From positions 248,001 to 312,000 of the IMG/VR virus record IMGVR_UViG_3300032236_001850: a stretch of DNA of 64,000 bases; one strand, given 5' to 3'. Within the stretch, counting starts at the first letter, position 1; every line of letters begins with the position of its first letter. A program made the translations under genes and the position numbers. A model generated the notes under the pieces. The model saw nothing but the letters and a program-made list of their open reading frames with translations, ran no database searches and was not told the DNA's origin. Positions 15,203-52,505 of the stretch are shown here, in pieces.

Positions 15203-15205
15203 ATT

Positions 15206-16003
15206 ATGCCAAGAAGAAAACCAAAACCGGAGAAAGTAATAGAGGAAAGAATAAAACAAAATCTTGATTCTATATTAATGGACGAGGGATTTAATGCTTC
15301 ATTCACTGCAGATTCTTTAGATCTACCAAGAATAAAAACAACAGATCTTATGGATTTTGCAGGAGCTCAGTCTTCTGCAGCTTCTGATGCTAAAGTTTTA
15401 ATGGATTCACTAGCTGAATTTTATGTTGATTTATCAACTGAGAATCAATCAGCTTTTCATGTCGAGCAGAAGAAAAAAATGGACACGATGAATGTTTCTG
15501 CCATGATGTTTCAACTAAAAACAGCACAACACACAATAACAAAGATTCTTGAGGAAATAGATCTTGGTAATACTAATCCAAGATTATTTGAGGTTTTAGC
15601 TCAAATGCAATCCCAGATAATGCAGATGCCTAAGGACTATCAGGCTTACCTCGAAAAGATGGAACAAAATTATAAGAAATCTAGAATTGAGATAGACGAG
15701 AAGAAACAATCCAATAGTGTTGTTATGAGTCAAGATTCCAATAGTGATTCATACAGTAGTCAATCTTCATCTGTTACTGAAAATGGCGGAATAAAATCAA
15801 GAGGAACTAGAGGTATAATGGAGGGTCTTAGGGATATAATAGGATCTGAGGTTGTTGATATCACGCCAGAGATAGTTGAACCAAATGCAGTAGTGAACGC
15901 TAAACATAAAAAAGTAATGGACCTTGATAATCCAAATGTTTCAAGAATTGATAACGATTCCGATGATTCGGATGGATTTATTATAGAGGATGATCTTTAT
16001 TAA
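15206..16003 (+). CDS. gp16: Probable terminase small subunit (T4 gp16-like)
   Basis: NPRLFEVLAQMQ resembles the gp16 PR..EV...L motif; directly upstream of the large terminase. Confidence 0.6.
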   Translation: MPRRKPKPEKVIEERIKQNLDSILMDEGFNASFTADSLDLPRIKTTDLMDFAGAQSSAASDAKVLMDSLAEFYVDLSTENQSAFHVEQKKKMDTMNVSAMMFQLKTAQHTITKILEEIDLGNTNPRLFEVLAQMQSQIMQMPKDYQAYLEKMEQNYKKSRIEIDEKKQSNSVVMSQDSNSDSYSSQSSSVTENGGIKSRGTRGIMEGLRDIIGSEVVDITPEIVEPNAVVNAKHKKVMDLDNPNVSRIDNDSDDSDGFIIEDDLY

Positions 16004-16005
16004 TA

Positions 16006-17832: not shown

Positions 17833-17857
17833 CATCAATAATTCTTATTTCTTTTTT

Positions 17858-17865
17858 GATATATA
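17858..17865 (+). promoter_or_regulatory. Putative late promoter GATATATA
   Basis: About 30 nt upstream of sheath ATG 17895. Confidence 0.6.
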
Positions 17866-17894
17866 GTACAGAAGTAAAAATATATTGAAAAATA

Positions 17895-20800: not shown

Positions 20801-21263
20801 TGACTTTACTAATGAGGATAGAGGAAATCTTGAACCTTTTGGTATCAATCCAATTATTAAAAGAAAAGGCATCGGTGTGGTTATATACGGTAACCAAACA
20901 GCTTATCAGCAAGTAAACTCAGCATTCAACCTAGTTCATGTTAGAGATTTGTTGATCAGTATTGAGAATGACGTTCAGGAGATATTAGCAAACTATCTTT
21001 TTGATTTCAATGAAGATTCAATAAGATTGGAGATTAAGACATTAGTTGATAACTATCTTGATGGAGTTAGATCAGGTGGTGGTATTTATGCTTACCAAAC
21101 GATAATGGACTCGTCAAATAACACTCCAGCTATTATAGACATGAATATGGGTATAATAGACATCATAATCGAACCTGCTAGAGGTATTCATAAATTCATC
21201 AATAGAATTACAGTTACCAGAACAGGTGGAATAGCTGCTGGAGGATTTATACAGTTCGTATAA
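17895..21263 (+). CDS. gp18: Contractile tail sheath protein (T4 gp18-like) with large insertion
   Basis: SGVYTLEFD, GFSNKGPFNTP, INPII, GNQT, NVRDL-like HVRDLL, FDFNE..IR, IEPARG. Confidence 0.92.
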   Translation: MANKVKIDYSQFRASGVYTLEFDASQNVILTSQTIRLVIGFSNKGPFNTPVYIPDATTMISIFGDIDASLENKGSFFHRSILTCLNAGPVFALNLLKLNDNLETSDPDMVTYRSFSVDTEEYNGEVTSELYSSYYNKERFWFADPNYFLATLSFADQGKLLSLTNLGKSPMSLIIRKSTDSTTPLLGYNIFAIDWYGANNVPTFMHPYDYISDYFIDVIAVYGNWTNYQALSVDPYWGATGLQMFTNNGFVKNKIDQFLANPNVSIVTSVTGCIIPDFVDLNGVNKYIQTLINNNTASTGLFCAIDEQAFDDLCNNPYRIDLVGNHLIDELSGDRDLPNPRINFLSYDQALEADYLYTQNVVGITGATGFVSPVGVTGFTKGAKVGTLFTIGGGTGATAGVYQGSFVTYDPNAYDTGMHYLLTKSITGTTGGILQNAAQKAALKSFLSVTSSDDEKFILGVVQGVAGLTGALISQFNEADIVKLKVTGTKDVSGELLIWWTHPLDTAQYRSQGVTVKPTYNLSTYNTGASGSNKPYYPNSYQFGNSDYFDIISLATPTGATGPGAPTGYTNSVVAYNASTFFQNHKYKEIVDGDSIWITPTGTPYEQYLGFQNTVDRDQFDLTYARAYSQQGTLDSSTIVNIADFGTSYASNNIGLPVSAQKLDIISQIGSINQFIDCTKLDVSKFTINTVNNVSPLSVGDWVVSTDLDICVPANGNRQSRLTKVKSVAQTGTPGLLKVETTRPVLYYSGVGGALRVQKFKSIPQFTTSFDFTFLKGFTMKERHRPNGTDARLNEILNVLYDTNIAKTLASKDVISFRYIVDTFSGIIGPESKSQYSRLAKMRQQALAIINAPSMAQFRASTDPRFTDAATASNPYPPLNTAYIADGGNLSLNPSYTFSLPTEEDGSKFCAFYSPYIVIRNGNKNLSVPPAAYVSNNFIRKFANGEPYAIVAGQKRGIISGGNIVGVEYDFTNEDRGNLEPFGINPIIKRKGIGVVIYGNQTAYQQVNSAFNLVHVRDLLISIENDVQEILANYLFDFNEDSIRLEIKTLVDNYLDGVRSGGGIYAYQTIMDSSNNTPAIIDMNMGIIDIIIEPARGIHKFINRITVTRTGGIAAGGFIQFV

Positions 21264-21303
21264 TTTTCGTTCTTTTGATCATCAAAGATAAATATAAGTA
21301 ATT

Positions 21304-21858
21304 ATGGCAGGACTATCACATTATCAAAACTCACTATCAGCAATAAACAAGTATGAACCTGTTTATCTGAACCAATTTGAAGTAACAATAATACCTCCAG
21401 CTGCTGTGGCAGGGGGTAGTATTTTGTTACAGCACGTTAGCAAAGTTAATGGACTTTCGTTAGATAAAAATCCAGGAACAGTTCAACAAAAATATAAATT
21501 TGCTAAAAGGAATTATGCGGGATCAAAGCCTGAAAATACCTTTATGGATCTTAGTATCACTTTCAGTGTCAACCTTAATGATGCGAATTCAATGTACGTT
21601 TTTAAAACATTAAGACAGTGGTCTGATTTGATCTATAATCCATTAACTGGAGCAATGGGTCTAAAAAACGATTACACAGGAAGTATAATCATCTCTGTTT
21701 TTAATAAAGCTGGTGACGTTTATAGAAGAATAACATGTAAAGATACGTTTCCGACTAAACCTATCTCGCCAATGAACTTGAACTATACAAGTACTGATCT
21801 ATATAAAATAGATGATATGGTGTTTGCGGTTGATTATTGGGACGATCTATTCCTATAA
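21304..21858 (+). CDS. gp19: Tail tube protein, copy 1 (T4 gp19-like)
   Basis: Follows sheath; EPVYLNQFEV...WSDLIYNP.TG.MG...DY...FP pattern. Confidence 0.85.
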   Translation: MAGLSHYQNSLSAINKYEPVYLNQFEVTIIPPAAVAGGSILLQHVSKVNGLSLDKNPGTVQQKYKFAKRNYAGSKPENTFMDLSITFSVNLNDANSMYVFKTLRQWSDLIYNPLTGAMGLKNDYTGSIIISVFNKAGDVYRRITCKDTFPTKPISPMNLNYTSTDLYKIDDMVFAVDYWDDLFL

Positions 21859-21872
21859 AATAAAAAACATAA

Positions 21873-22448
21873 ATGGCTGGATTACCACATTTTACAAATT
21901 CTCTTGCAGGTATAAATAATTTTGAGCCTGTATACCTTAATCAGTTTGAGGTACTGATAAGCCCACCTGCTGCTATTGTTTCAGCAAGTACGACTTTCCA
22001 TGGTGAGAGTATATTAACTCAACAGGCTAAATCCATAACTGGATTAGCTGTTGATATTGCTCCAGCACAAACGGTAAACCAAAACTATAAGTTTGCAACT
22101 AGAAGATATGCTGGGGGTGAACCTCAAACGAGTGATATGAATTTAACCATTGAATTCGAGGTTAACCTTAACAAGTCAAATTCTATGGAACTTTATAAAA
22201 TTCTTAGACAATGGTCTGATTTGATCTATAATCCATTAACTGGAGCAATGGGTCTAAAAAACGATTATGTTGGTTCCATACTTATCTCAATATTCAACAA
22301 ACAAGGGGACGTTTTCAGAAGAATAAGAATTCCTTCGTGTTTTATAAGTGAACCTATAAACGCTATGGATCTTGATTACGAAACTCCTGCTATCTATACT
22401 ATAAGAACTTCGTGGGTCTGTGATTATTGGGAAGATCTATTCCTATAA
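21873..22448 (+). CDS. gp19: Tail tube protein, copy 2 (paralogue)
   Basis: Same motifs as copy 1; 56-bp identical tract shared. Confidence 0.85.
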   Translation: MAGLPHFTNSLAGINNFEPVYLNQFEVLISPPAAIVSASTTFHGESILTQQAKSITGLAVDIAPAQTVNQNYKFATRRYAGGEPQTSDMNLTIEFEVNLNKSNSMELYKILRQWSDLIYNPLTGAMGLKNDYVGSILISIFNKQGDVFRRIRIPSCFISEPINAMDLDYETPAIYTIRTSWVCDYWEDLFL

Positions 22449-29569: not shown

Positions 29570-30259
29570 GTGCAAAATTTAGAAACACCCAGCATTAACA
29601 ATTACGACGGTGGATCCTCAGCAAGTCCTGGAGGCAACGAAATATTCGGTGGAAATTCTGGATTTCCCATAGGTCCTGGACAATACCCAACAAACGGTGC
29701 TACTGGTTCTTTTAAAACAGAATATAAAAACATAGTAAATACTAGGGATCAATTTAAACTAATAGAGGCTACCTTTCAGAGGTTTAATGAACCAGTGGGA
29801 GTAAAATTTATAAAAGAATCTTTTGATGTTGTCTATCAGTCTCAGGTTTTAGATTTTCTTGATGTTGCTGAATTTTTTCATCCACTGCAGGATTTTTCAA
29901 ATTATCAAAAGCAAACAATAATAATAAATCCAACAACATCATTCAATCTTGATTCTGGATCATTTACTGACACAAATGGAGAAATATCTATGTTGATTGC
30001 AAGAGCTGAGTATCTACCAGAGGCTGCTAATAATGATAGAGTTTTATTATGGGACTATTTGGGTTCTCAGAGAAATTTAATGGGAGATTTTATGGTTCTA
30101 ACCGGAGCTATAAAAAAAGGATACAATTGGAAAGGATGGGATATAGATCCTTTCAGTAATTATGCACATAACGGATTAGCAAATAGTGCTAACGGTGGAT
30201 TTATATTTACCAATCCAACAAGTATGGTTGTAAAACTAACAATAATAACAGCAAACTAA
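29570..30259 (+). CDS. Putative structural protein, paralogue A
   Basis: GTG start; shares MGDFMVLTGA / GW / NGGFIFTNP motifs with the next gene. Confidence 0.6.
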   Translation: MQNLETPSINNYDGGSSASPGGNEIFGGNSGFPIGPGQYPTNGATGSFKTEYKNIVNTRDQFKLIEATFQRFNEPVGVKFIKESFDVVYQSQVLDFLDVAEFFHPLQDFSNYQKQTIIINPTTSFNLDSGSFTDTNGEISMLIARAEYLPEAANNDRVLLWDYLGSQRNLMGDFMVLTGAIKKGYNWKGWDIDPFSNYAHNGLANSANGGFIFTNPTSMVVKLTIITAN

Positions 30260-30260
30260 C

Positions 30261-30746
30261 ATGGCAACAAGACCAATAGCGTGTCCTTATGACGCACCTG
30301 AAGGATTTAGATTTTATAGAGATAATCTAGTTTTAGATGATGGTACAAAATCATCTCCTCCTAAATATCTTTCTATGAAGGATCTTTTTATTGGAGTTGA
30401 TTCTTTTTCGAAAAGTAGGGTTTCTTTAAATCCTGGTGAATCTTTTCTGTTGAGTCAAAGTGACATTGGTGATGATATGGGCTATGTTTCTTTTATTGCA
30501 ATAAAAGCAAAATTCCCGGACACTGTTGTTGAATCTAGGAAATATTTAACCTGGACATATAAGGGTCAAATGATGAATATGGGAGAGTTAATGATTCTTT
30601 CTGGTGCTAAACAATATGCAACAGATTCATCATACGATGGATGGAATTTATCTAAACCTAATGAATACCTTAATAATGGCGGAATGATATTTAATAATCC
30701 ACATACGGATTTTCAGATAAAATTAGAGATATTGATAGGTAGATAG
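30261..30746 (+). CDS. Putative structural protein, paralogue B
   Basis: MGELMILSGA / GW / NGGMIFNNP. Confidence 0.6.
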   Translation: MATRPIACPYDAPEGFRFYRDNLVLDDGTKSSPPKYLSMKDLFIGVDSFSKSRVSLNPGESFLLSQSDIGDDMGYVSFIAIKAKFPDTVVESRKYLTWTYKGQMMNMGELMILSGAKQYATDSSYDGWNLSKPNEYLNNGGMIFNNPHTDFQIKLEILIGR

Positions 30747-30828: not shown

Positions 30829-33402
30829 ATGGACTTTATAAATCAAGTTAAAAAAGTAAAAGAATCAACAAAATCTCCTGAGGTGAAGGCTTTATGTGAA
30901 AGTTACCTTAGTGGTGGTACAGTTTCTAGAGAGAAATTAGTACTTTTGATTAGTGAGAATAACGCATCCGTGGAATCAGATAATACTGGAAATAACATAC
31001 AAAATCATATGGATTTAATAAAAAGAGAAGAGTCGGAGATCTCTAAAAAAGCTGCTGCTTCCCTAATGGAATCATGGGGAGGATTAGGAAAATCTACAAC
31101 AGGTAGTAATTCTGGATCTTATAACGGTAAACCGAATGAGACCAAAAATGATGAAAACTCTCTTTATGAAAGTATTAGTAGTTTAGAATCTTTAGATCCT
31201 GCTGCAAAATCATTTATTGAAACACAGAGTATCAAAAATCTTGGTGTTAGAGGTGCTATAGAGAAAATAAAAGAATCTTCAATATACACATATCCTAAAG
31301 CAAAAATGGTTTGCGAACAATATCAGTACCTTTTGGAAAACAAAGGCATTCCTGAATTTTCACTTATTCATAATTTTGTAAATGAACTTGCTTCATTTTC
31401 TTGGGATTCTTCAATAGCTCCTATTGCTGAGGAACTTAAGGAAAAAACTAAAAAATTATCTAGAGAAATAGAGGTTGCTAAAGTTTTAGAATCTATTAAA
31501 GGAAGCGGAAGCTCTTCATTCTACTCTGAACTTTCTGATACCCTTAATACCTGGTTGGTTTCTGAGAGCAAATCTAATGGATTGTTAATTAGAAACATCT
31601 CTAAGTATTCATTTAACCCAGTAGTAAAAAATCTTATTAATTTCTTAAATATTCAAGAAAGTACAGATAGTAGAAAATTAGAGGTTCCTGTTAATGTACA
31701 AGGTGAATCTACGGTTTCTAAAGTTTATTCTCCCGTTCTTTTTGAAGGTGGAAGAACATTCTTCTTTATTGGCGGATGTATATTCGAAGCAACTTCAAAT
31801 TCATTAAGAAAGTTAGCAAAATCTGAGTATTCTGCTTTATCAGAAGGTTATTTAAGACTTTCTTTAACTACAATGAAACCACACGTTAAAATAAACGAAT
31901 CTGGTATTTCTGTTAAACTGGGTAACAAGATAGTTACTATGGTTGAAGAAAATGATAAAGTTTCTGTTTATCTTGGAAAAGATAAACTTAGATTTGGTGA
32001 CACAATAGGTTTAGCTAAGATCGTTGGTCTTGAATCCTCATCATATTTCGGAGTTAATGAATCTGAGGCTGTTGATGATATCATGACACTTTATACAAAC
32101 TATTCAAATGTTGTTGAATTGGATTTCGCTAAATCGATAACTTCCAATGTTTATGAAGGACTTGCTATTAATCTTTTCAAATGGAATGGACAAATTTATC
32201 TTCAGAAGATAAACGAGGCTATGAGAGAAAATTCACTTTATGAAGTTAATGGATCTCAAGCAGTTGCGATGGTTAAAAACTTTATGAGATATGATATATC
32301 TGAGGGATTAACAGAATTCTTAGAAGGTGAATCTAGAATTAAATCAGTAATGATTAATGATAGAAACAAGGTTCTTGAAAATATTTCTAAGATAGAAGGA
32401 GAAATCAATAAGGTTGAATCTCTTATGGAATCAAATCCATTATACAAAAACTCTAAGGAAATAAGAGTTGCTCATTCTATGTTGGAAAAAGAATTACAAT
32501 CGCTTAAAACTAAATGGAATCAAATAAACATAGAAATCCAAAAAATTGAGGAAGATATAGAGCTTCAGCCAAATCCGGATTTATTTGAGGATCAAAAATT
32601 CAATATTGGTTCTTTTGTGAAAGTTAAAGAATCTGGGGAAACTGGTAAAGTTATCTCTATAGATGGATCATCGGGAAGATACACAGTTCTTTTAGACAGC
32701 GGTAAAACTGCTGATCATCAAATAAACGAGCTTGCTGATTTAGACGAGGCTTTAAACAAAGCTGCTGATGATAATGCAGAATCTGCTGAGGATAACAATG
32801 ATGATGCTGGAGAAGTTAAAGAATCAAACAACCTTAATAAATCTCAGCTTCCTATAGGAGAGCAAAAGAAAATGCTTAAAAAACTTGCAGGAATGCACGG
32901 ATTCTCAAAAGCACCTGGTGCTAATAACGAGAAAATAGATATGGACGGTGATTCATTACATGGATACAACAGAACAATGAACGAGGGTAAAGCTGATCTT
33001 AAGAACGGAACACCTAAAACTAATTATTCTAAAGCTCCTGGTAACGATAAAAAAGCTCCCGCTTCAACTCCTAAAAATAAAACATTAGCAAGTGCTCCTA
33101 ATAAAAAAGGAAATTCTAAGCTTACTAAAGGAACAACAGATCCTAATTTTTCTGATGCTCCTGGTGATGATGTATTAGGCAAAGGTAAAAATGCAAATCC
33201 AAAAAAGAGTTTAGCTGTTGCTCCTGGTGATGGTGCTAGAATAAAAGCTAAAGAATACGGTAAGGATAAACTTAGAGAAGCACCAGATGATAAAAACGGT
33301 GATTTAAGATTTGACGTTTCTGGAGTTAGAGATGAAAAAGAGTACAAAGCTGGATACAATCTTAAGGATCTTAAAGAATCTGAAGAAGTAAAAAAAAACT
33401 AA
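30829..33402 (+). CDS. Large putative head/core protein with coiled coil, KOW/SH3-like module and KAPG-repeat tail
   Basis: FNIGSFVKVKESGETGKVISID..GRYTVLL; repeated (K/S/D)AP(G) motifs; ends at A-AAA-AAC-TAA. Confidence 0.65.
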   Translation: MDFINQVKKVKESTKSPEVKALCESYLSGGTVSREKLVLLISENNASVESDNTGNNIQNHMDLIKREESEISKKAAASLMESWGGLGKSTTGSNSGSYNGKPNETKNDENSLYESISSLESLDPAAKSFIETQSIKNLGVRGAIEKIKESSIYTYPKAKMVCEQYQYLLENKGIPEFSLIHNFVNELASFSWDSSIAPIAEELKEKTKKLSREIEVAKVLESIKGSGSSSFYSELSDTLNTWLVSESKSNGLLIRNISKYSFNPVVKNLINFLNIQESTDSRKLEVPVNVQGESTVSKVYSPVLFEGGRTFFFIGGCIFEATSNSLRKLAKSEYSALSEGYLRLSLTTMKPHVKINESGISVKLGNKIVTMVEENDKVSVYLGKDKLRFGDTIGLAKIVGLESSSYFGVNESEAVDDIMTLYTNYSNVVELDFAKSITSNVYEGLAINLFKWNGQIYLQKINEAMRENSLYEVNGSQAVAMVKNFMRYDISEGLTEFLEGESRIKSVMINDRNKVLENISKIEGEINKVESLMESNPLYKNSKEIRVAHSMLEKELQSLKTKWNQINIEIQKIEEDIELQPNPDLFEDQKFNIGSFVKVKESGETGKVISIDGSSGRYTVLLDSGKTADHQINELADLDEALNKAADDNAESAEDNNDDAGEVKESNNLNKSQLPIGEQKKMLKKLAGMHGFSKAPGANNEKIDMDGDSLHGYNRTMNEGKADLKNGTPKTNYSKAPGNDKKAPASTPKNKTLASAPNKKGNSKLTKGTTDPNFSDAPGDDVLGKGKNANPKKSLAVAPGDGARIKAKEYGKDKLREAPDDKNGDLRFDVSGVRDEKEYKAGYNLKDLKESEEVKKN

Positions 33403-33560: not shown

Positions 33561-33566
33561 TTTATA

Positions 33567-33600
33567 AGAATGTAGTATTTTTTACTACATTCTTTTTTTA
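33567..33600 (+). terminator. Intrinsic terminator
   Basis: AAGAATGTAGTA-ttttt-TACTACATTCTT plus T-run, placed just after the -1 frame stop. Confidence 0.8.
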
Positions 33601-33664: not shown

Positions 33665-34024
33665 ATGGCAAAAGTTTATGTAAAGAATAGTGAACTCATG
33701 GCAGCAGTGATTGAATCAAAAAATGCTGGAAAATTGACACCCGAAACTATAGAGATGTTCAATCTTATGATTGAAGGTATATCTAAGAAGATGTCATACA
33801 AAGATCCTGAGGATAAAGAGGATTGTATGGCTTTTGCCATGGAAGATCTTTGTAAATATTGGAATAGATTCAATCCAGAAAAATCAAATAATCCATTTGC
33901 TTATTTTACTCAGATAGCAAAACACGGATTTGCTAAGGGATGGAAAAAATTACATCCACCAAAAAATCCAGTAACGATACCATTTAGTTATATTACTGGT
34001 GATGATAATTCATATAACGTATAG
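33665..34024 (+). CDS. gp55: Minimal late sigma factor (T4 gp55-like)
   Basis: RFNPEKSNNPFAYFTQIA matches the gp55 FDP.KS.NPFAYFTQ signature; only 119 aa. Confidence 0.8.
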   Translation: MAKVYVKNSELMAAVIESKNAGKLTPETIEMFNLMIEGISKKMSYKDPEDKEDCMAFAMEDLCKYWNRFNPEKSNNPFAYFTQIAKHGFAKGWKKLHPPKNPVTIPFSYITGDDNSYNV

Positions 34025-34027
34025 ATT

Positions 34028-34513
34028 ATGACTGATATTAAAAAGATAAAACCTAACGGTGAATATAAATCTGGTAAATATGATCCAAAAAATCCAGAAA
34101 AGTATATAGGCGATATCCATAATATCATATACAGATCATCATGGGAATATAGATTCTGTACATATTGTGACACTAATGAAGCAATATTAAAATGGAGTTC
34201 TGAACCCGTGGTTATACCATATTATAATCCTCTTGATAAAAAAGACCATAATTATAATGTCGATTTCTATATTAAGGTTTTGAAAGAAGATAATAGTGAG
34301 CAGGAATGGATCATAGAGATAAAACCTGAAAAACAAACGGTTAAACCTATAATGGAAGGGGTTGTAACGATGGCTAAATTGAAATCCTATAATAGAAATA
34401 TGCAAATATGGATAACAAATCAAGCTAAATTTAAAGCAGCCAAGGAATGGGCTGATAAAAGAGGATATAGATTTGGTGTTATCGATGAAAACTTCCTATT
34501 CAAGAGCAGATAA
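34028..34513 (+). CDS. gp4: Head completion nuclease (T4 gp4-like, TnsA N-terminal fold)
   Basis: KYIGD..NIIYRSSWE...WSSE...IPY...DFYI...IEIKP...NQAKF.AA. Confidence 0.85.
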   Translation: MTDIKKIKPNGEYKSGKYDPKNPEKYIGDIHNIIYRSSWEYRFCTYCDTNEAILKWSSEPVVIPYYNPLDKKDHNYNVDFYIKVLKEDNSEQEWIIEIKPEKQTVKPIMEGVVTMAKLKSYNRNMQIWITNQAKFKAAKEWADKRGYRFGVIDENFLFKSR

Positions 34514-34551: not shown

Positions 34552-36186
34552 ATGGCAGGTTTTGTAGATAATAATAAACCATCAGAGTCACCGGTTATAC
34601 AGAGGATAAGGGAATCAGTTAAAAAATTGAGTACCTTTGGTATGAAGTATGATGACATGGTAATAAGAAATTCGCAAGCTGTCGGTGTAACTGAAGCTGC
34701 ATTTCTTAACAAGAATAAAGCTAACGTTGAAGACGAAAGCATGCTATGGTCTCTAGCCAAGCAGGATATTACATCCAGACAATTCATAGGTTACTTTGAC
34801 AAGGATTATAAGGGAAAAAGAGATTTTCTAAGAATGTTTTCTTTGAATCCTGAAGTTGAATGGGTTCTTGATACCATTTGTGACGAGGCTATAACATATG
34901 ATCCAGCAAACTTTTTTGCGTACCCAGATTTTATAGATCTTTCCGATGTAAACGAAAAGGTAAAAGACGAGCTTTATGACGTTTATAAGAACCTATACGA
35001 TATATGGGGATTCTCCGATGATATAACAGCATGGCAATATTTTAGACAGTTTATAATTGATGGATTTCTAGCTTTTGAAATTGTTTACGATGACAGCGGA
35101 AAAAATATAGTTGGCTTCAAGGAACTTGATCCTATAACATTAATTCCTAGCGTTGAAAAACAACTTGATGGAAGTTTTGTTAGTACATGGACACAATATC
35201 CGCAAGATCCTAAAAAGAAGCGTACTCTCTACGATCCACAAATAATCTATATCTCATATGCTAAGGGTAACTCCATATCGAGAGTTAGTTACATTGAAAG
35301 ATTAATAAGACCTTATAATATATTAAGAATTATAGAATATACTAGGGTTATATGGTCTGTAATGAACGCTTCATTCAAATTGAAAATGACCGTTCCAATT
35401 GGTACCAAATCTCAACAGAAAGGCATGCAAACTCTGGGTGAACTTATGAGTGTATATAAGGAGGACATACAACTTAATGATGAGAGTGGTGAACTTACAG
35501 TTGATGGTAGACCTAAGATTCAATTTTATAAAAATTACCTTATGCCATCAGGTGTTAATGGTACACCAACAATAGAACCAATTAATACGGAGGGACCTAA
35601 TCTTAACGATCCAGCTCCTCTTACATATTTCTTTGATAAATTCATACTTGAATCTAAGGTTCCACCTTCAAGATTTCATAACCCAGATGGTGGTAGCACT
35701 TCACCATATTCAAATGGAGCTGAAGGTCTAGATAAAGAGGAGATAAGATTTTATAAATTTATTTCTAGACTGAGATCAGTGTTTCAGGAGATATTGGTTA
35801 AACCTATGTGGATACAAATGGTTAAAAAATATCCTCATTTAGAAAAGGATTTTCTTTTCAAAAGTCAACTTGGACTTAATTATTGGTCTGATAATCCATT
35901 TAAGGAAAATCAGGAAATTGGTAAAATGACTCAAAGAAAAGAAACAATTACCGGTCTTGGTGCTCTTATGAACGATGACGGTAAACCTTTCTTCTCGAAT
36001 GCTTTTCTTATAGAGGAATTTTTAGGTATGTCTAAACAAGACATAGCAGCAAACAAAGAGGCTAAAGAAAGAAAAATAAAGGAAAAAGCAGCAGCTGAGA
36101 AAAAAGCAGCAGGAGCAACTGGAGCAGCAGGCGGCGGGGGTAAAAAAGAAGGCGGTGAAGAAAAACCACCACAAGTAACACTATAG
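34552..36186 (+). CDS. gp20: Portal vertex protein, copy 1 (T4 gp20-like)
   Basis: FRQFIIDG, ELDP, SYIERLIRPYN.LRI.E...VIW, KNYLMP, EEIRF.KFI.RLR. Confidence 0.9.
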   Translation: MAGFVDNNKPSESPVIQRIRESVKKLSTFGMKYDDMVIRNSQAVGVTEAAFLNKNKANVEDESMLWSLAKQDITSRQFIGYFDKDYKGKRDFLRMFSLNPEVEWVLDTICDEAITYDPANFFAYPDFIDLSDVNEKVKDELYDVYKNLYDIWGFSDDITAWQYFRQFIIDGFLAFEIVYDDSGKNIVGFKELDPITLIPSVEKQLDGSFVSTWTQYPQDPKKKRTLYDPQIIYISYAKGNSISRVSYIERLIRPYNILRIIEYTRVIWSVMNASFKLKMTVPIGTKSQQKGMQTLGELMSVYKEDIQLNDESGELTVDGRPKIQFYKNYLMPSGVNGTPTIEPINTEGPNLNDPAPLTYFFDKFILESKVPPSRFHNPDGGSTSPYSNGAEGLDKEEIRFYKFISRLRSVFQEILVKPMWIQMVKKYPHLEKDFLFKSQLGLNYWSDNPFKENQEIGKMTQRKETITGLGALMNDDGKPFFSNAFLIEEFLGMSKQDIAANKEAKERKIKEKAAAEKKAAGATGAAGGGGKKEGGEEKPPQVTL

Positions 36187-36190
36187 TAAC

Positions 36191-37843
36191 ATGGCAGGAT
36201 TTTTAGACTTTTTAAAACCCAATCAAGCAGCTTTGGGTAACATACTTAAAAATTTGGGTAGCATATCCAAATTTGGTATGCAGTACGATGACATGGTTGT
36301 TAGAAATTCGCAGGCTATTGGTAGAACCGAGGGTGCTTTTTTCAATCAGGAAGGAACAGGATATACTAAGGATAGCGCATTTCAATGGACAGCTTCGTAT
36401 CATGACACTAAGGTAAGAAAATACATAGCTTATTTTGATAAATCATATGGAGAAAAAAGAGATTATTTAAGAAAGTTTTCCATAAATGGTGAGATAGAAT
36501 TCATACTGGATATCATAACAGATGAGGCCATAGTATATGACGATAGAAACTATTTTGCGCAGCCTTCATTTTCCAATCTTGATCTTAAGGACAAAGTTAA
36601 GGAGAGGGTAAGCACACATTTCAATAGACTTTATAATATATTTCAGTTCCAGAATACAGTATTGGGCTGGCAATATTTCAGACAATTTATAATAGATGGA
36701 TTCTTGGCTTTTGAGATAATCTATGATAATAAGGGAAAGGAGATAATAGGATTCAAGGAACTTGATGCTATTTCTTTACAACCAACGGTAGAAAAAGTTG
36801 GTGAAAATGAATATAAGCAGTTCTGGATACAATATCCAAGTAATCCACAAATGTTTAGAAAACTTACTAATGAACAAGTTATCTACATATCATATGCGAA
36901 GGGTAATACTATATCAAGAACAAGTTACGTTGAAAGACTTGTAAGATCTTATAACATTCTAAGAATTATGGAGAATTCTAGAGTTATCTGGAACGTAATG
37001 AATGCCAGTTATAGAATGAAATTCATAATTCCCATAGGAACACAGTCTCCACAAAAAGCCATGCAAACTTTGGGACAACTTATGTCCAACTATAAGGAAG
37101 AGATTAGCATAAATGATTCATCCGGAGAATTAACAGTAAACGGTAGACCTAAGGTTCAATTCTATAAGAATTATTTATTTCCCGAACAGAATGGAGTTTC
37201 ACCAGAGATATCTTCTCTGAATCCAGCTGGACCTGATTTCAATGTTATGGATAATGTTCTTTATTTCTTCAATAAATTAAAAATGGATTCTAAAATCCCA
37301 TATGCTAGATTTGCTGCAAAAAATGGAACACCTGCTAATTACCAAATAGCAATAGATCAGCTTGAAAGAGATGAAATAAGATTCGAAAAGTTTCTAAGAA
37401 GACTTCGTTCAATATTCCAGGAAATCCTGGTTAAACCACTCTATATACAAATGTGTTTGGAATACCCAGAATTGGCTAAAGATAGAAATTTTAAAACCAA
37501 CATAGGTTTAAATTTTAATAGAGATCTTGAATTCGAGGATCAGGTTGAAATGACTAATCTTAAAAAGAAAAGTGAATTTGTAACTGCTCTTTCAGATTTA
37601 AAGGTAAAAGCTGGGGAGGAGGATGTACCTTATTTCGATAATGACTTTCTGATACAGAGATTTTTAGGTATGTCTCCTGATCAATTGAAATTGAACGAGG
37701 AATACAAGAAAAAAGAGGAAAAAGCCGGAGCTGCACCTCCTGCTGCTGGCGGAGAATCAGCACCCGCTGCCGGATCGGCTGCTCCCGCGGGAGAAACCCC
37801 ACCAGCAGGTGGCGAAGCAAAAGCACCACAGGTAACACTATAA
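36191..37843 (+). CDS. gp20: Portal vertex protein, copy 2 (paralogue)
   Basis: Same motifs: FRQFIIDG, SYVERLVRSYN, KNYLFP, DEIRFEKFLRRLR. Confidence 0.9.
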   Translation: MAGFLDFLKPNQAALGNILKNLGSISKFGMQYDDMVVRNSQAIGRTEGAFFNQEGTGYTKDSAFQWTASYHDTKVRKYIAYFDKSYGEKRDYLRKFSINGEIEFILDIITDEAIVYDDRNYFAQPSFSNLDLKDKVKERVSTHFNRLYNIFQFQNTVLGWQYFRQFIIDGFLAFEIIYDNKGKEIIGFKELDAISLQPTVEKVGENEYKQFWIQYPSNPQMFRKLTNEQVIYISYAKGNTISRTSYVERLVRSYNILRIMENSRVIWNVMNASYRMKFIIPIGTQSPQKAMQTLGQLMSNYKEEISINDSSGELTVNGRPKVQFYKNYLFPEQNGVSPEISSLNPAGPDFNVMDNVLYFFNKLKMDSKIPYARFAAKNGTPANYQIAIDQLERDEIRFEKFLRRLRSIFQEILVKPLYIQMCLEYPELAKDRNFKTNIGLNFNRDLEFEDQVEMTNLKKKSEFVTALSDLKVKAGEEDVPYFDNDFLIQRFLGMSPDQLKLNEEYKKKEEKAGAAPPAAGGESAPAAGSAAPAGETPPAGGEAKAPQVTL

Positions 37844-37870
37844 AGGAATATTCATATATTCCTTTTTTTG
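37842..37870 (+). terminator. Intrinsic terminator
   Basis: AAAGGAATAT-tcat-ATATTCCTTT plus T-run. Confidence 0.75.
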
Positions 37871-48798: not shown

Positions 48799-50763
48799 AT
48801 GTACAAAATGCCAACAACTAAAAAATTAAACGAAGAATTAGTTTTCATTCTAGAAAGACAATCATCCGTTCTTGAATCTTCAAGAAACGATAATGATGAT
48901 TATGTCCTTGAAGGTATTGCTGCTGTTTTCGGTAAAGAGAACAACAATAATAGAATATATGAAGAAGCTGAATATCTTCCTCACTTAAACTATCTTAATG
49001 AGAAAATAGCTCAGAGAAGATTGGTTGGAGAATTGGATCATCCTGAAAAATTTGACGTTTCTCTTAAAAACATTTCCCATATAATCGAAAAACTTGATTA
49101 TGATAAAAATGGAAGAGAAATTAAAATTAAAGTTAGACTTTTAGATACACCAATGGGTCAGATAGCTAAAAATCTTGTTGATGCAGGAGTTCCTCTTTCT
49201 ATTTCTTCCAGAGCAGCTGGTTCTGTTGGTAATGATAAAAAAGTTCAAATTAAAAAAATATTCACATATGACCTAGTTGCTGATCCTGGTTTTCAAGACG
49301 CACAACTAGAAAGAGTATATGAAAGCGCTGGTTATCATTTTAGTGATTTCTTCGAAATGAGAAATAAAAGTGTAACTAACGATCTACTTTGTGTAAATGA
49401 ATCATTAGGTCTAAAAAATGATTCAGATGTGAAGATATATAAAGTTGAAAATAACGAAGAATTTAATAACCTCGTATCAAAATCAGATAAAAATAAGACG
49501 ATCCTCATGGAGAATAATGAATTTGTGACTGCAGAAGAATTAAACCAATATTCTGTTTTCTTGAAAAAAGAGATGGAAGCAATGAATTCTAAAATTGCAG
49601 AAATTAAAGAACAAAAGCAAGTATTAACTGAATCTAGCTTTGAAGATAAAAATTCAAACCTTGAAGAAAGAGTTGCTAAATTAGAAAAATATTCTGAGTA
49701 TTTAGCTGAGAATTTAGATAATGCTATTAAGTATGGTGAATACCTTGCTGAAAACTTAGACGAGAGTATAAGTTATAGCAAATATTTAGCTGAAAACTTA
49801 GATAAGAATATTTCTTATTCTAAATATCTTGCTGAAAATGTTGACAAATCAATTTCTTATACTGAGTACGTTGCTGAATCAACAGATAAAGGTATAGAGT
49901 ACACTAAATATCTTGCTGAGAAATTAGATCAGAACATTCAATACTCTGAGTACTTAGCAGAAAACTTAGACAAAGGTATTTCTTATTCTGAATATCTTGG
50001 TGAGAACTTAGACAAAGGTATAGCTTACTCTGAGTACCTAGCAGAAAAATTAAATGATGGTATCGAGTATTCCGAATACCTTGCAGAGAATCTTAACAAG
50101 AATATCCAATATTCCGATTACCTAGCAGAAAATGTTAATAAAGGTTTAGATTATTCTGATTACTTAGCAGAAAAATTGAAAAAATCAATCTCTTACAGTG
50201 AATATATAGCTGAGACAGTTAATACAACTAAATACAAAGCTACTGACTCATTAAGAGAAAGTGTAGATCTTTCAGCTTCAGCAGGATTAAATGAATCAGG
50301 ATTTGCTGGAGATTATACAGATCTTACAACAAGAATAGATAGTTTGATAGAATCAGTTAAAACACAAAAAACTGAGTCAAATATAAATGAAGCTTCTAAA
50401 TCAATGAAGCAAACAGCCAACACACAAAAGGCAGACGAAGTTCTTAACGAAAATGAGAACAAAAACAAAACAGGTCTTAATTTTATTGACACAATGCCTG
50501 AAGAATACACACAAGTTTGGGAATCACTTACTGAAGGACACAAGCAATCAATTATTGCTCAAAGTAACTTCTATAGATTAGATACACCTTACCAAGTGAA
50601 AAACTTCTGGTCAACACGTCAATTAGGAACTGCACCAGTTGGAGTTCAAAAATTAGACGAGAGCGAAAATATCGCAATGCCTAATGCACAAACAAGCGGT
50701 TATTCTAACGAATATATGAACGCTATTGCTGCTGCATTAGAGAAAAAATTTCAAACAAGATAA
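48799..50763 (+). CDS. gp21: Prohead protease (T4 gp21-like) fused to scaffold/core domain
   Basis: NNNNRIY, GELDHP, ISHII, LDTPMG, SSRAAG, TYDLVADPG; C-terminal coiled-coil repeats. Confidence 0.9.
   Translation: MYKMPTTKKLNEELVFILERQSSVLESSRNDNDDYVLEGIAAVFGKENNNNRIYEEAEYLPHLNYLNEKIAQRRLVGELDHPEKFDVSLKNISHIIEKLDYDKNGREIKIKVRLLDTPMGQIAKNLVDAGVPLSISSRAAGSVGNDKKVQIKKIFTYDLVADPGFQDAQLERVYESAGYHFSDFFEMRNKSVTNDLLCVNESLGLKNDSDVKIYKVENNEEFNNLVSKSDKNKTILMENNEFVTAEELNQYSVFLKKEMEAMNSKIAEIKEQKQVLTESSFEDKNSNLEERVAKLEKYSEYLAENLDNAIKYGEYLAENLDESISYSKYLAENLDKNISYSKYLAENVDKSISYTEYVAESTDKGIEYTKYLAEKLDQNIQYSEYLAENLDKGISYSEYLGENLDKGIAYSEYLAEKLNDGIEYSEYLAENLNKNIQYSDYLAENVNKGLDYSDYLAEKLKKSISYSEYIAETVNTTKYKATDSLRESVDLSASAGLNESGFAGDYTDLTTRIDSLIESVKTQKTESNINEASKSMKQTANTQKADEVLNENENKNKTGLNFIDTMPEEYTQVWESLTEGHKQSIIAQSNFYRLDTPYQVKNFWSTRQLGTAPVGVQKLDESENIAMPNAQTSGYSNEYMNAIAAALEKKFQTR
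49690..50235 (+). repeat. 13 tandem 42-bp (14-aa) coding repeats, consensus YSEYLAENLDK.I.
   Basis: Counted directly in the translation. Confidence 0.9.
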
Positions 50764-50780
50764 AAAAAAGTAAATAAATC

Positions 50781-52505
50781 ATGAAATTGATTAACGAACA
50801 AGAAATCTACGATACATGGTCACCGCTTATCGAGAGCAAAGCTGGTATCACAGATGAAGGAAAAAAAGGGTGGTTAACTAAATATTGCCACTATCACTCA
50901 TTAAACGAGTCTGCTGGTGCTTATAACACTTTAGGTGTTGTAAATGGTATGGGTAACGTTGCTCCTCCTGCATTCCCAGGAATGAATATGGGTGGTACAA
51001 CATTATCTACACAAGCTAATGCTGGTTTCTACAACACACAATGGCAAGGTTCAGGTGATAAATTCCCATCATTATTACCTTTAGCAATTCAAGTTGCTGC
51101 AAAAACTATCGGTTTCGACATCGTTCCGGTTATCCCTATGTCAGGTCCAACTGGTATCTTATCATACTTGGATTATGTTTATGCTGGTGGTAAAATTGCT
51201 GCTGCTGCTGGTACTGATGCTGCTTCTCAGTTAGCTAGTGCCCCATCAATGATCAAATTCCCAGTTTATCAGTCATCTACTGGTGCTACTGGTGCTACTG
51301 GTGCTACTGCAGGTACATTTACAGCTGGTGCTACTGGTAACATTGGAACATTAAACTTAACATTCATAGGTCTTTCTAGAATTGATGGTTTCCCAATCTT
51401 CCAAGTAACTGGTATGGCTGCTGGTTCTAACATTGCTAGCTATATTAACGGTACTCCTACTGTACTTACTAACTTTGGTTCTAGTGGTTTCTATACTGGT
51501 GCTACATATTCTAGTAACGGTTATACAGCTCAATTAGTTAAAGCTTTAGAGGATCACATCCAAGGTTTCTCTGGTGCTGGTTTTAATAATACTGATGCTT
51601 GGCAAGGTCCTTACGTTGATGGTACTAAAACTTACAATCCTATGTTAAGAGGTGTTGGTGAGTCTACTTACTTCAACTCAATGGGTCTTTCGACTTTCAC
51701 TAAATTCGTTGAAGCTGAGACATTCCAAGTAGCTGCTTCTGTTACAACAGAGCAAATACAAGACCTTAACAAACAATTCGGTATCGATGTTATTTCAATG
51801 ATCGAGAACGCATTGGTTAATGAGGTATCTCAAGCTATTAACAAACACATCTTAGCAAGAGCATTTGCTTTAGGTTGGTCAAATCACGTTTTATTCAACA
51901 GTGTTGAAAACCAAAACTTGAACTTAAACCTTGTGATCAACGGTTCTGCTGGTACAACATTCTCTTACATCAACAAAATTGATGCTAACGTTGCAATGGC
52001 AATTCCAGCTGGTCCTGCTTCAGGCGGTTATGAGAACTTATCAACTCTTCAAAGAAGATTATTCTCAAGAATCCTTGCAGCTGCAAACGTAGTAGCTAAC
52101 AGAGGTAGAAGAGGTCCTGCTAACTTCATCGTTACTAACGCTGCTGTAGCAAGTGCACTTCAAGATATCTCTCAGTTCACTTTCGCTCCATTCTCTAACA
52201 CATTAACTCAAAACAATGGTACTTTATACCCTGTAGGTTCTCTTGCTGGTATGACTGTTTACGTTGATCAGAATATGCAGTATTCTGATACGAGAGTATT
52301 AGTTGGAAGAAAAGGTGGTGATGATGAACCAGGATTAAAATTCATGCCTTACATGATGGCAGAGTCTATTCAGACAATCTCTGAAGGTACTATGTCACCT
52401 AAGATCGCAGTTAAATCTAGATATGCTTTAGTAGAAGCTGGTTTCTTACCAGAAACTATGTACTTAACATTCTTTGTTAACGTACCTGCTGGTGGTTTAG
52501 CATAA
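50781..52505 (+). CDS. gp23: Major capsid protein (T4 gp23-like)
   Basis: W.PLIE, LNE|SAG propeptide, VIPMSGPTG, QDL..QFGID, RGRRGPANF, MPY, KSRY. Confidence 0.95.
   Translation: MKLINEQEIYDTWSPLIESKAGITDEGKKGWLTKYCHYHSLNESAGAYNTLGVVNGMGNVAPPAFPGMNMGGTTLSTQANAGFYNTQWQGSGDKFPSLLPLAIQVAAKTIGFDIVPVIPMSGPTGILSYLDYVYAGGKIAAAAGTDAASQLASAPSMIKFPVYQSSTGATGATGATAGTFTAGATGNIGTLNLTFIGLSRIDGFPIFQVTGMAAGSNIASYINGTPTVLTNFGSSGFYTGATYSSNGYTAQLVKALEDHIQGFSGAGFNNTDAWQGPYVDGTKTYNPMLRGVGESTYFNSMGLSTFTKFVEAETFQVAASVTTEQIQDLNKQFGIDVISMIENALVNEVSQAINKHILARAFALGWSNHVLFNSVENQNLNLNLVINGSAGTTFSYINKIDANVAMAIPAGPASGGYENLSTLQRRLFSRILAAANVVANRGRRGPANFIVTNAAVASALQDISQFTFAPFSNTLTQNNGTLYPVGSLAGMTVYVDQNMQYSDTRVLVGRKGGDDEPGLKFMPYMMAESIQTISEGTMSPKIAVKSRYALVEAGFLPETMYLTFFVNVPAGGLA

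What the first reader, a model, noticed from the sequence alone, without database searches (positions are those of the whole stretch)
34552..37843. Two full-length tandem portal genes, both ending in PQVTL
Seen: two diverged gp20-like ORFs (544 and 550 aa), both intact, both starting MAGF, and both ending in a different low-complexity Ala/Gly/Pro/Lys linker followed by the same PQVTL-stop. Known: tailed phages normally build one homododecameric portal from one gene. Inference: a hetero-oligomeric portal, or a second portal-like vertex. The conserved tip beyond divergent linkers suggests a shared docking peptide.
Basis: partly seen in the sequence, partly recalled or inferred. Interest (0 to 1): 0.72.

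Follow-up and report, generated by a model that had tools for sequence, protein, structure and literature searches.

The report
Two conserved portal genes in megaphage
A 434-kb freshwater phage and all its known relatives carry two adjacent, equally well-conserved copies of the portal gene, the gene for the ring through which DNA enters and leaves the head. This hints at a mixed-subunit portal, which the searches run here did not find reported for any tailed phage, but only experiments can confirm it.

Summary
Window 34552-36186 (A, 544 aa) and 36191-37843 (B, 550 aa) are intact T4-gp20-type portal genes, 49% identical and 4 nt apart. Both start MAGF and end PQVTL.

- **Age and spread.** This is an old, fixed duplication, not a recent or decaying copy. 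Every informative related contig (more than 80, with portals down to about 52% identity) has the same A-then-B pair. A and B form mirror-image clades. Single-copy megaphages (LR756500, LR756502, Lak) branch outside.
- **Selection.** Both copies are under equally strong purifying selection (dN/dS about 0.02-0.05).
- **Where they differ.** Fixed A/B differences cluster in the stem, clip and tunnel loop. The capsid-facing wing and the N-terminus stay shared.
- **The tip.** The C-terminal tip is this clade's version of a hydrophobic C-terminus common in gp20-type portals. B almost always has it, A in only 35 of 57 genomes, and A/B tips are repeatedly homogenised within genomes.
- **Best reading (inferred, about 0.45).** Both proteins are subunits of one hetero-oligomeric portal ring. 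Separate rings cannot be excluded.
- **What is missing.** No expression or virion data were obtainable.
- **Tail tube.** The tail-tube gene is duplicated in tandem too; in the six genomes checked, the four two-portal genomes have two copies and the two single-portal genomes have one.

The parts
34552..36186 (+). Portal paralogue A (544 aa), a T4 gp20-type portal protein. The stop is TAG, followed in frame by TAA.
   Evidence: ORF. PF07230 E 4.9e-56. phrog_213. The AlphaFold model's best PDB matches are T4 gp20 chains (E 9e-17). Orthologues are 52-96% identical in all related contigs.
36191..37843 (+). Portal paralogue B (550 aa), a T4 gp20-type portal protein.
   Evidence: ORF. PF07230 E 2.3e-67. 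phmmer against PDB hits T4 gp20 at E 3e-20. The AlphaFold model's best PDB matches are T4 gp20 chains (E 4.5e-21). Orthologues are 51-94% identical in all related contigs.
36187..36190 (+). 4-nt spacer between the stop of A and the ATG of B (sequence ...CTA TAG TAAC ATG...). This points to co-transcription and probably coupled translation.
   Evidence: Sequence read directly. The spacing is -1 to 23 nt in 57 non-redundant genomes. No + strand terminator-like site lies between 33594 and the end of B.
36109..36183 (+). Flexible low-complexity C-terminal tail of A (residues 520-544, Ala/Gly/Lys/Glu-rich). It ends in the tip PQVTL (36169-36183).
   Evidence: pLDDT is below 50 for residues 520-544. 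An in-frame 3-nt indel among strains lies at 36136.
37730..37840 (+). Flexible low-complexity C-terminal tail of B (residues 514-550, Ala/Pro/Gly/Glu-rich). It ends in the tip PQVTL (37826-37840).
   Evidence: pLDDT is below 50 for residues 514-550. The last 21 nt match those of A at 19 of 21 positions.
37844..37869 (+). Terminator-like hairpin directly after B: AGGAATAT / loop TCAT / ATATTCCT, followed by a T run.
   Evidence: Read directly. It was not reported by the consensus scan, which requires 3 or more G-C pairs, so this is a weaker call.
34028..34513 (+). T4 gp4-like head-completion (head closure) nuclease, immediately upstream of A.
   Evidence: phrog_218 E 3.2e-48.
33665..34024 (+). 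T4 gp55-like late sigma factor, the first gene after the + strand terminator-like site at 33566-33594.
   Evidence: phrog_234 E 2e-15. Terminator scan.
48799..50763 (+). Prohead maturation protease (gp21-like domain at the N-terminus of a 654-aa protein). Head-module context and a candidate interior partner of the portal tails.
   Evidence: phrog_207 E 1.2e-39. PF03420 match.
50781..52505 (+). Major capsid protein (gp23-like). Head-module context.
   Evidence: PF07068 E 1.7e-41. phrog_138 and phrog_28442.

Best explanation
Shown: the two ORFs are functional paralogues of the T4 gp20-type portal protein. They arose by one ancient tandem duplication at the base of a widespread clade of freshwater, pond and other environmental phages with genomes of about 320-434 kb. 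Both have been kept intact, adjacent and under equally strong purifying selection ever since. Inferred: both proteins are true portal subunits seated in the capsid vertex, because both keep the invariant MAGF N-terminus and the same conserved wing. They most likely co-assemble into one hetero-oligomeric dodecamer, the simplest form being alternating A6B6. The fixed differences lie in the stem, clip and tunnel loop. In T4 these parts line the DNA channel, form the beta-sheet shared between neighbouring subunits, and dock the terminase and neck. An alternating ring would give the channel and the outer docking face a built-in six-fold pattern while the capsid-facing side stays uniform. The disordered C-terminal tails project from the crown into the head interior. 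Their hydrophobic tip is the clade's form of a family-wide C-terminal anchor. It is obligatory on B, dispensable on A, and is repeatedly copied between B and A.
For: - **One old duplication.** A-type and B-type genes are each monophyletic (SH-aLRT 100 and 100) and together exclude single-copy portals (98). Their subtrees mirror each other. A careful tree with deeper two-copy lineages (L102, L104, L106, L108) gives the two-copy clade 100/99 and the first genes 100/97. LR756500, LR756502 and Lak-A1 have one portal each.
- **Both functional.** dN/dS is 0.02-0.05 for both, mean dN is 0.178 against 0.183, r = 0.98. SNPs between strains fall at third codon positions in 12 of 12 cases (A) and 19 of 21 (B). 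Positions conserved in only one paralogue are balanced, 27 against 32.
- **Co-expression is likely.** The spacer is -1 to 23 nt in 57 genomes, and a hairpin plus T-run occurs only after B.
- **Shared capsid side, diverged channel and clip side.** Of 32 sites fixed differently in A and B, 24 lie in the 146 columns aligned to T4 stem+clip+tunnel (residues 255-398), against 8 of 384 elsewhere (Fisher p = 1e-8). Among columns conserved in both, p = 1.6e-4. The first wing segment has 52 identical conserved sites and 1 differing site. T4 structural papers assign the clip to the inter-subunit beta-sheet and to gp17 and gp13 docking, the tunnel loops to neighbour contacts, and the N-whisker to capsid contact (PMC4493910, PMC7136217, PMC12929629).
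- **Rate covariation.** A and B distances correlate at r = 0.96 (partial 0.69-0.80). Each correlates less with the linked gp4, ligase and clamp-loader genes (0.85-0.92; partial 0.19-0.61).
- **Tails behave as if they meet the same partner.** The last five residues are identical in A and B in 22 of 32 genomes, against 8.1 on shuffling (maximum 16 in 5000). Exact A/B nucleotide matches of 20-37 nt lie in or at the 3' end of the otherwise fast-evolving tail in L043, L011, L015, L045 and L006.
Against: - There is no direct evidence of co-assembly. The one complex prediction allowed (A 14-510 with B 14-513) scored 0.02 and counts neither way.
- No RNA run was listed and no proteomic data exist, so even co-expression is inferred.
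- Every comparative signal (equal constraint, rate covariation, shared wing, tail homogenisation) would also be expected if A and B formed two separate homododecamers that contact the same capsid, scaffold or terminase.
- Rate covariation between two paralogues of one fold is expected to be high anyway.
- The mapping of fixed differences onto T4 domains rests on an alignment at about 18% identity.
- The monomer models are poor in the clip (pLDDT 35-65).
- No heteromeric portal turned up in the literature searches run here, so the prior is low.
Confidence: 0.45

Rival explanations
1. Two separate homododecameric rings. A and B each form their own portal-type ring with a distinct role. Examples would be a second special vertex on a very large capsid, or one ring that nucleates prohead assembly and another that serves packaging and tail attachment.
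For: Both keep every portal domain, the N-terminus and the wing, so each could sit in a vertex on its own. The fixed differences lie in the channel lining and the clip, which would give two rings different channels and different docking partners. The tail-tube gene is also duplicated, so a second conduit-like structure is conceivable.
Against: Only one large terminase was noticed in the window, only one gp13/gp14-type neck match was found in the genome, and the genome-wide paralogue scan lists no duplicate of the terminase or neck gene. A second working vertex might be expected to need its own partners. Tight operon spacing and equal constraint suggest matched dosage. No tailed phage with two portal vertices turned up in the literature searches. 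None of this is decisive.
Confidence: 0.3
2. One true portal plus a moonlighting paralogue. One copy (probably B, which is closer to the Pfam profile and always carries the tip) is the portal. The other has taken a different ring or assembly role: a stacked ring under or over the portal, an internal head component, or an assembly factor or decoy.
For: B scores higher against PF07230 (228 against 191 bits). A has lost the hydrophobic tip in 22 of 57 genomes while B keeps a hydrophobic end in all of them.
Against: A shows no sign of a shifted constraint pattern. It has the same dN and the same number of uniquely conserved sites. The MAGF N-terminus is invariant, the first wing segment has 52 shared conserved sites against 1 differing, and the clip, stem and tunnel regions are all still present. 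Post-duplication branch lengths are symmetric at 0.47 and 0.50.
Confidence: 0.15
3. Interchangeable or conditional isoforms. Either paralogue can build the portal alone, and the pair is kept for dosage, for different hosts or temperatures, or to escape a host defence that targets portal proteins.
For: Portal proteins are known triggers of some anti-phage defence systems (general knowledge, not tested here). The two genes are full-length and similar in every domain.
Against: The duplication predates the divergence of portals down to about 52% identity, and no copy was lost in more than 80 contigs. There are 32 positions fixed differently and conserved at 90% or more within each paralogue. Simple redundancy or dosage does not maintain such a pattern. 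Co-transcription argues against conditional use.
Confidence: 0.08
4. Artefact or decaying duplicate. The pair is an assembly error, or one copy is a pseudogene in the making.
For: None found.
Against: Contigs from runs of three other studies bridge the junction. The pair is present in a second complete genome, G001, and in 78 of 80 related loci. Both frames are open everywhere, and dN/dS is 0.02-0.05.
Confidence: 0.01

Closest known systems
Bacteriophage T4 portal protein gp20 (Pfam PF07230; PDB 3JA7, 6UZC, 9MKB)
   Same: Both A and B match the family profile end to end, and their models hit T4 gp20 first. The domain order is the same. Both have a short conserved N-terminus and a disordered acidic or low-complexity C-terminal tail ending in a hydrophobic residue (T4 ends ...EQEDF). 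The window keeps a T4-like core gene order: neck, large terminase, sheath, tube..., gp4, portal..., protease, major capsid protein.
   Different: T4, and all 1318 GenBank phage records that match A, have one full-length portal gene. Here there are two, 49% identical, fixed across a clade. The identity of either to T4 gp20 is only about 18-22%.
Single-copy portals of related huge phages (LR756500.1 at 462 kb; LR756501-4 at 634-735 kb; Prevotella Lak phages at about 540-550 kb)
   Same: These are the nearest sequenced relatives (44-46% identity to LR756500, 34-37% to the others). LR756500 and its relative L114 also start MAGF. All have a low-complexity tail with a hydrophobic or aromatic end.
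   Different: They carry one portal gene. LR756500 and LR756502, the two checked, also carry one tail-tube gene. They branch outside the A+B clade.
T4 gp23/gp24 (major capsid protein and its vertex paralogue)
   Same: This is a precedent within T4-type heads for an old duplication of a structural gene whose two products are built into one assembly at defined, different positions (established knowledge; gene annotation). This genome also has a gp23-like and a shorter gp23-family gene.
   Different: gp24 occupies separate capsomers (the pentons), not alternating places in one ring. That the portal copies share one ring here is inferred, not shown.
Hetero-oligomeric rings that evolved from homo-oligomers by duplication (for example eukaryotic CCT, proteasome alpha and beta rings, MCM2-7, the fungal V-ATPase proteolipid ring)
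   Same: The evolutionary pattern is the same: duplication of a ring subunit, both copies retained for a long time, and fixed differences concentrated near inter-subunit surfaces. The analogy comes from general knowledge.
   Different: Co-assembly is demonstrated experimentally in those systems. It is not demonstrated here. They are cellular machines, not viral portals.

Membership tests
T4-type portal protein (gp20; Pfam PF07230) | Significant full-length match to the family profile | tested here: met
   A: 190.7 bits, profile positions 9-430 of 433. B: 228.1 bits, positions 6-433 of 433. The cut-off is 22.9 bits. phrog_213 portal protein at E 3.5e-55 and 5.1e-68.
T4-type portal protein (gp20; Pfam PF07230) | Portal fold (wing, stem, clip, crown) resembling solved gp20 | tested here: met
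   The top Foldseek PDB hits for both AlphaFold models are T4 gp20 chains (A: E 8.8e-17; B: E 4.5e-21), followed by other phage portals. Caveat: mean pLDDT is 65.6 and 62.7, and the clip is poorly modelled in the monomers.
T4-type portal protein (gp20; Pfam PF07230) | Genomic context within a T4-like morphogenesis gene set | tested here: met
   A gp4-like head-completion nuclease lies directly upstream. Neck, large terminase, sheath, tube, prohead protease and gp23-like capsid genes are in the same window.
T4-type portal protein (gp20; Pfam PF07230) | Assembles as a dodecameric ring at one capsid vertex | not testable with these tools
A 12-mer exceeds the size limit.
T4-type portal protein (gp20; Pfam PF07230) | Single gene per genome giving a homo-oligomer (the usual state of the family) | tested here: not met
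   This genome and G001 each have two full-length genes. None of 1318 matching GenBank phage records has two.
Hetero-oligomeric ring built from paralogous subunits | Both paralogues retained under purifying selection across the clade | tested here: met
Hetero-oligomeric ring built from paralogous subunits | Co-expression of the paralogues | tested here: inconclusive
   The operon-like spacing of -1 to 23 nt and the lack of an internal terminator support it. No RNA run was listed.
Hetero-oligomeric ring built from paralogous subunits | Physical co-assembly in one ring with defined stoichiometry | not testable with these tools
   Complex prediction gave no answer. No proteomic or structural data are available.
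   B carries the tip in 54 of 57 genomes by a strict pattern, and the other three also end hydrophobic. A carries it in only 35 of 57. The deep lineage L108 lacks it on both, and L106 lacks it on B.
   No partner was identified. No other protein in the genome carries the linker plus tip.

The most novel reading that the evidence does not exclude
The two proteins form an obligate alternating A6B6 portal, which would be a heteromeric portal not found in the literature searched here. It would hard-wire six-fold symmetry into the DNA channel and into the terminase and neck docking face. It may have arisen together with the parallel duplication of the tail-tube gene, as a remodelling of the whole DNA conduit in phages that package 320-434 kb.
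Probability: 0.4. Interest if true: 0.85.

Novelty: new variant of a known kind. Interest (0 to 1): 0.62.

Why it matters
The portal is the textbook case of a homo-dodecamer placed in a five-fold vertex. It nucleates head assembly, docks the packaging motor, senses headful packaging and joins the tail. A clade in which two diverged portal subunits have been kept together since before their portals diverged to about 52% identity offers a natural experiment. It bears on how symmetry mismatches (12:5 with the capsid and motor, 12:6 with the tail) can be handled, and on how a homomeric ring becomes heteromeric. The clade is common in pond, lake and virome data sets, so material for proteomics or cryo-EM exists. 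For annotation, it warns that 'one portal per phage' rules used by marker-gene counts and completeness estimates fail for this group.

Tried and rejected
- **Complex prediction.** A 14-510 with B 14-513, using my own alignments, scored 0.02. The tool's verdict was 'no answer', so it is not used as evidence.
- **Expression evidence.** No RNA run was listed for the 3.3-kb stretch. The second run search found only DNA runs.
- **Literature.** Three full-text searches for duplicated, paralogous or hetero-oligomeric portal genes found nothing relevant. The jumbo-phage comparative paper PMC7824862 mentions the portal only as a single gp20 orthologue.
- **A second portal in LR756501 and LR756503.** It is only a 101-aa fragment at 22 bits.
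- **Tip codons constrained by an overlapping signal.** The sequences after the two stops differ (TAGTAACATGG against TAAAGGAATATTC...), with no T4 late-promoter TATAAATA and no Shine-Dalgarno sequence. This idea is rejected.
- **Read-through or frameshift fusion of A and B.** A ends with two in-frame stops (TAG TAA) and B is in another frame. Rejected.
- **The tip as a general capsid-targeting tag.** No other predicted protein of the genome has a low-complexity linker plus the tip.
- **First structure job.** They were left out and the job was rerun.
- **Megablast of the region against GenBank phages.** No match.
Full report
**1. The observation.** The window holds two adjacent + strand ORFs, 34552-36186 (A, 544 aa) and 36191-37843 (B, 550 aa). 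They are 49% identical over their whole length. Both match Pfam Portal_T4 (PF07230) almost end to end, at 190.7 and 228.1 bits against a cut-off of 22.9, and both match PHROG 213 'portal protein'. Both begin MAGF and end PQVTL after unlike low-complexity tails. The window is bases 248001-312000 of a 434,509-bp IMG/VR virus genome with direct terminal repeats, rated 100% complete. These are its only two portal matches.

**2. Not an artefact, and rare.**
- Logan contigs from runs of three other studies (two pond metagenomes, one virome) hold a strain about 98% identical, with contigs that bridge the A/B junction.
- tblastn of A against 50,697 GenBank phage records found 1318 records with a match and 1320 places.
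- The two extra places belong to LR756501 and LR756503 and are a 101-aa fragment.
- So no sequenced phage in that collection has two full-length gp20-type genes.
- Three full-text literature searches found no report of duplicated or heteromeric portals.

**3. Relatives.**
- The nearest GenBank records are uncultured huge phages: LR756500 (462 kb, 44-46% identity), LR756501-4 and LR745206 (634-735 kb, 34-36%), and the Prevotella Lak phages (about 36%).
- LR756500, LR756502 and Lak-A1 each have a single portal.
- In IMG/VR, a search with B returned 129 relatives, of which 80 were kept (65-94% identity).
- An ORF and BLASTP scan showed the same arrangement in every locus with enough upstream DNA. 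An A-orthologue (65-96% identical to A, about 50% to B) is followed directly by a B-orthologue, and both are intact. That holds for 78 of 80 loci; the other two contigs start at B.
- A second search found deeper two-copy lineages: L102, L104, L106 and L108/L109. In L108 the two genes are only 52% and 51% identical to A and B.
- Relatives of LR756500 (L114-L118) are single-copy.
- A protein-database search showed the family to be abundant in JGI, ENA and Logan assemblies, always named 'hypothetical protein'. One copy is filed under a Chitinophagia MAG.

**4. Phylogeny.**
- With 57 non-redundant genome pairs and four outgroups, A and B are reciprocally monophyletic (SH-aLRT 100 and 100).
- Together they exclude the single-copy portals (98), and their internal topologies mirror each other.
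- The stem branches are symmetric at 0.47 and 0.50.
- A careful tree with the deeper lineages gives the two-copy clade 100/99 and the first genes (including L108) 100/97. L108's second gene sits in an unresolved position at the base of that clade.
- The result is one old duplication followed by strict co-inheritance.

**5. Selection.**
- Nei-Gojobori estimates give dN/dS of 0.02-0.04 for A and 0.02-0.05 for B in every dS bin.
- Mean pairwise dN is 0.178 for A and 0.183 for B, with r = 0.98.
- Between strains, the listed SNPs lie at third codon positions in 12 of 12 cases in A and 19 of 21 in B (positions, read against the frames).

**6. Expression signals.**
- A ends CTA TAG TAA, followed by C and then the ATG of B. 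An 8-bp hairpin plus a T run follows B only.
- The consensus scan finds a + strand terminator-like site at 33566-33594 and none between there and the end of B.
- gp55-like sigma factor, gp4-like nuclease, A and B may therefore form one transcription unit.
- The A-to-B spacing is -1 to 23 nt in all 57 genomes.
- No RNA run could be listed, so co-expression remains an inference.

**7. Where the paralogues differ.**
- I aligned 114 A and B sequences with T4 gp20 and used the T4 domain limits from PMC4493910.
- There are 32 columns conserved at 90% or more in A and in B but with different residues.
- Of these, 24 fall in the 146 columns aligned to T4 stem+clip+tunnel loop (residues 255-398), against 8 in the other 384 columns (Fisher p = 1e-8). 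Among columns conserved in both paralogues the test gives p = 1.6e-4.
- Twelve fall in the 50 columns aligned to the channel loop, stem helix alpha7 and tunnel loop (p = 7e-6).
- The first wing segment has 52 identically conserved columns and one differing column. The N-terminal region has 23 and 2.
- Sites conserved in only one paralogue are balanced, 27 against 32.
- In T4, the clip forms the only main-chain beta-sheet between neighbouring subunits and is where gp17 and gp13 bind. The tunnel loops touch their neighbours. The wing and the N-terminal whisker contact gp23, and the whisker is essential.
- The invariant MAGF start is shared with single-copy LR756500 and L114, so it is ancestral.
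- AlphaFold models of both proteins have the same order of secondary-structure elements, well-modelled wings, poor clips and disordered tails. Both retrieve T4 gp20 first.
- Caveat: the T4 mapping rests on about 18-22% identity.

**8. The tails.**
- B ends in a hydrophobic-x-hydrophobic tip (VTL, FTL, VTI, ATL and similar) in 54 of 57 genomes by a strict pattern. The other three also end hydrophobic.
- A has such a tip in only 35 of 57. In whole subclades it ends in acidic or proline-rich sequences such as ...PPQE...TPPAT or ...NKEDK.
- In L108 neither copy has the tip, and in L106 B lacks it.
- Within genomes the A and B tips tend to be identical: 22 of 32 genomes, against 8.1 on shuffling (maximum 16 in 5000; related genomes are not independent). 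The matching pairs come in six forms: PQVTL, PEVTL, PAVTL, PAVTI, EAVTL and (last four residues) TATL.
- In L043, L011, L015, L045 and L006 the longest exact nucleotide match between A and B (20-37 nt) lies in the otherwise fast-evolving tail or at its 3' end.
- In the window the last 21 nt agree at 19 positions. Both tips use the minority codons GTA (23% of Val codons) and CTA (16% of Leu codons).
- This is concerted evolution, most simply explained by repeated gene conversion of the 3' tip.
- A hydrophobic or aromatic last residue after an acidic or Gly-rich tail is also found in 9 of 10 single-copy gp20-type portals sampled. These are T4 ...EQEDF, S-RIM8 ...RGEF, pT24 ...NFGF, MA9V-2 ...NQGY, PAU ...KYRI, LR756500 ...TSGY, LR756501 ...APTF, LR756502 ...EFEF and L114 ...DLGL. 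PTm1 is the exception.
- No other protein of this genome carries the linker plus tip.
- The tip is therefore the clade's version of a family-wide C-terminal feature whose role is unknown even in T4. By position it sits on the crown, inside the head.

**9. Further comparative signals.**
- Distances among A orthologues and among B orthologues covary more tightly with each other (r = 0.96; partial 0.69-0.80) than with the linked gp4, ligase or clamp-loader genes (0.85-0.92; partial 0.19-0.61). This is suggestive but expected to some degree for paralogues.
- A genome-wide paralogue scan found few tandem pairs.
- One is a pair of tail-tube (gp19-like) genes at window 21304-21858 and 21873-22448, 57% identical.
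- In the six genomes checked it follows the same distribution as the portal pair: two copies in G000-G003, one in LR756500 and LR756502.
- The large terminase, sheath, neck gene, protease and gp23-like capsid gene have no tandem copy. A shorter gp23-family gene lies elsewhere in the genome.

**10. Interpretation.**
- Shown: an ancient, clade-wide, tandem pair of functional portal paralogues with symmetric constraint, a shared capsid-facing side, and fixed divergence in the channel, clip and inter-subunit parts.
- Inferred: both are vertex-seated portal subunits.
- The most economical model is one hetero-oligomeric ring, in its simplest form alternating A6B6. It would need only the single terminase and neck genes found and would use the matched dosage of an operon. 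It would also explain fixed differences at neighbour-contacting elements and why both tails track the same tip. I put this at about 0.45.
- Two separate homododecamers, that is a second special vertex or a division of labour (about 0.3), are not excluded by any result here.
- One portal plus a moonlighting copy (about 0.15) fits the loss of the tip on A but not the symmetric constraint.
- Redundant or conditional isoforms (about 0.08) fit poorly with the age of the pair and the 32 fixed differences.
- An artefact is excluded.

**11. Novelty and verdict.** The proteins are ordinary members of the gp20 family by sequence, fold and context. What departs from the family is copy number and, probably, subunit composition of the ring. 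I therefore class it as a new variant of a known kind. No report of such a pair was found in the searchable literature. Interest is 0.62: the genomic facts are solid and unusual, but the striking reading remains unproven. If the mixed ring is confirmed, it would deserve about 0.85.

Noticed in passing
window 21304-21858 and 21873-22448 (+): A tandem pair of tail-tube (gp19-like) paralogues, 57% identical (phrog_32623, phrog_3629). It is two-copy in the same clade (G000-G003) and single-copy in LR756500 and LR756502, the same distribution as the portal pair in those six genomes.
   Followed up: partly
window 12710-22448 and 48799-52505: A T4-like core gene order is preserved with insertions: neck (gp13/14-like, 830 aa), large terminase, a 1122-aa sheath, tube x2, then gp55, gp4 and portal x2, and later a 654-aa protease fusion and the gp23-like capsid gene. 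Replication genes (ligase, clamp loader, guanylate kinase, exonuclease) sit between the portal and the protease.
   Followed up: partly
window 36169-36195 and 37826-37843: The Val codon of the tip is GTA in the large majority of the A and B genes listed (genome usage 23%), giving a recurrent GTAACA. The same hexamer occurs again directly before B's ATG (GTAACATGG). No explanation beyond gene conversion was found.
   Followed up: partly
window 36136: A 3-nt in-frame deletion in the low-complexity tail of A in the strains of three other sequencing runs. The tails tolerate length changes.
   Followed up: no
window 29570-30259 and 30261-30746 (+): Two adjacent ORFs (229 and 161 aa) with visibly similar C-terminal halves (...LMGDFMVLTGA... 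against ...NMGELMILSGA...). They have no PHROG match and were not detected as paralogues at E 1e-8. They may be another diverged tandem pair.
   Followed up: no
window 30829-33402 (+): An 857-aa protein with no PHROG match. It has a coiled-coil-like middle and a long Lys/Pro/Gly/Asn-rich low-complexity C-terminal third. Homologues occupy the same position upstream of the portals in related loci.
   Followed up: no
genome G000:C1 116883-122746, 201730-203992, 354007-361133: Other tandem paralogue sets lie outside the window. One is an 871/1074-aa pair at 65% identity with no PHROG match, whose first member ends ...GFTL. Another is a 382/370-aa pair at 39% identity with no match. A third is a set of three proteins with tail-fibre-like N-termini.
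   Followed up: partly
protein P0011; runs X1-X14: One A-orthologue is deposited under a 'Chitinophagia bacterium' MAG. The phage or near strains occur in pond, freshwater and viral metagenomes of several studies. This hints at a freshwater Bacteroidota host, or it may be mis-binning.
   Followed up: no
G001, G002, G003 (genomes of L005, L026, L031): Related genomes rated 100% complete span 319-430 kb, so genome size varies by more than 100 kb within the two-portal clade.
   Followed up: no
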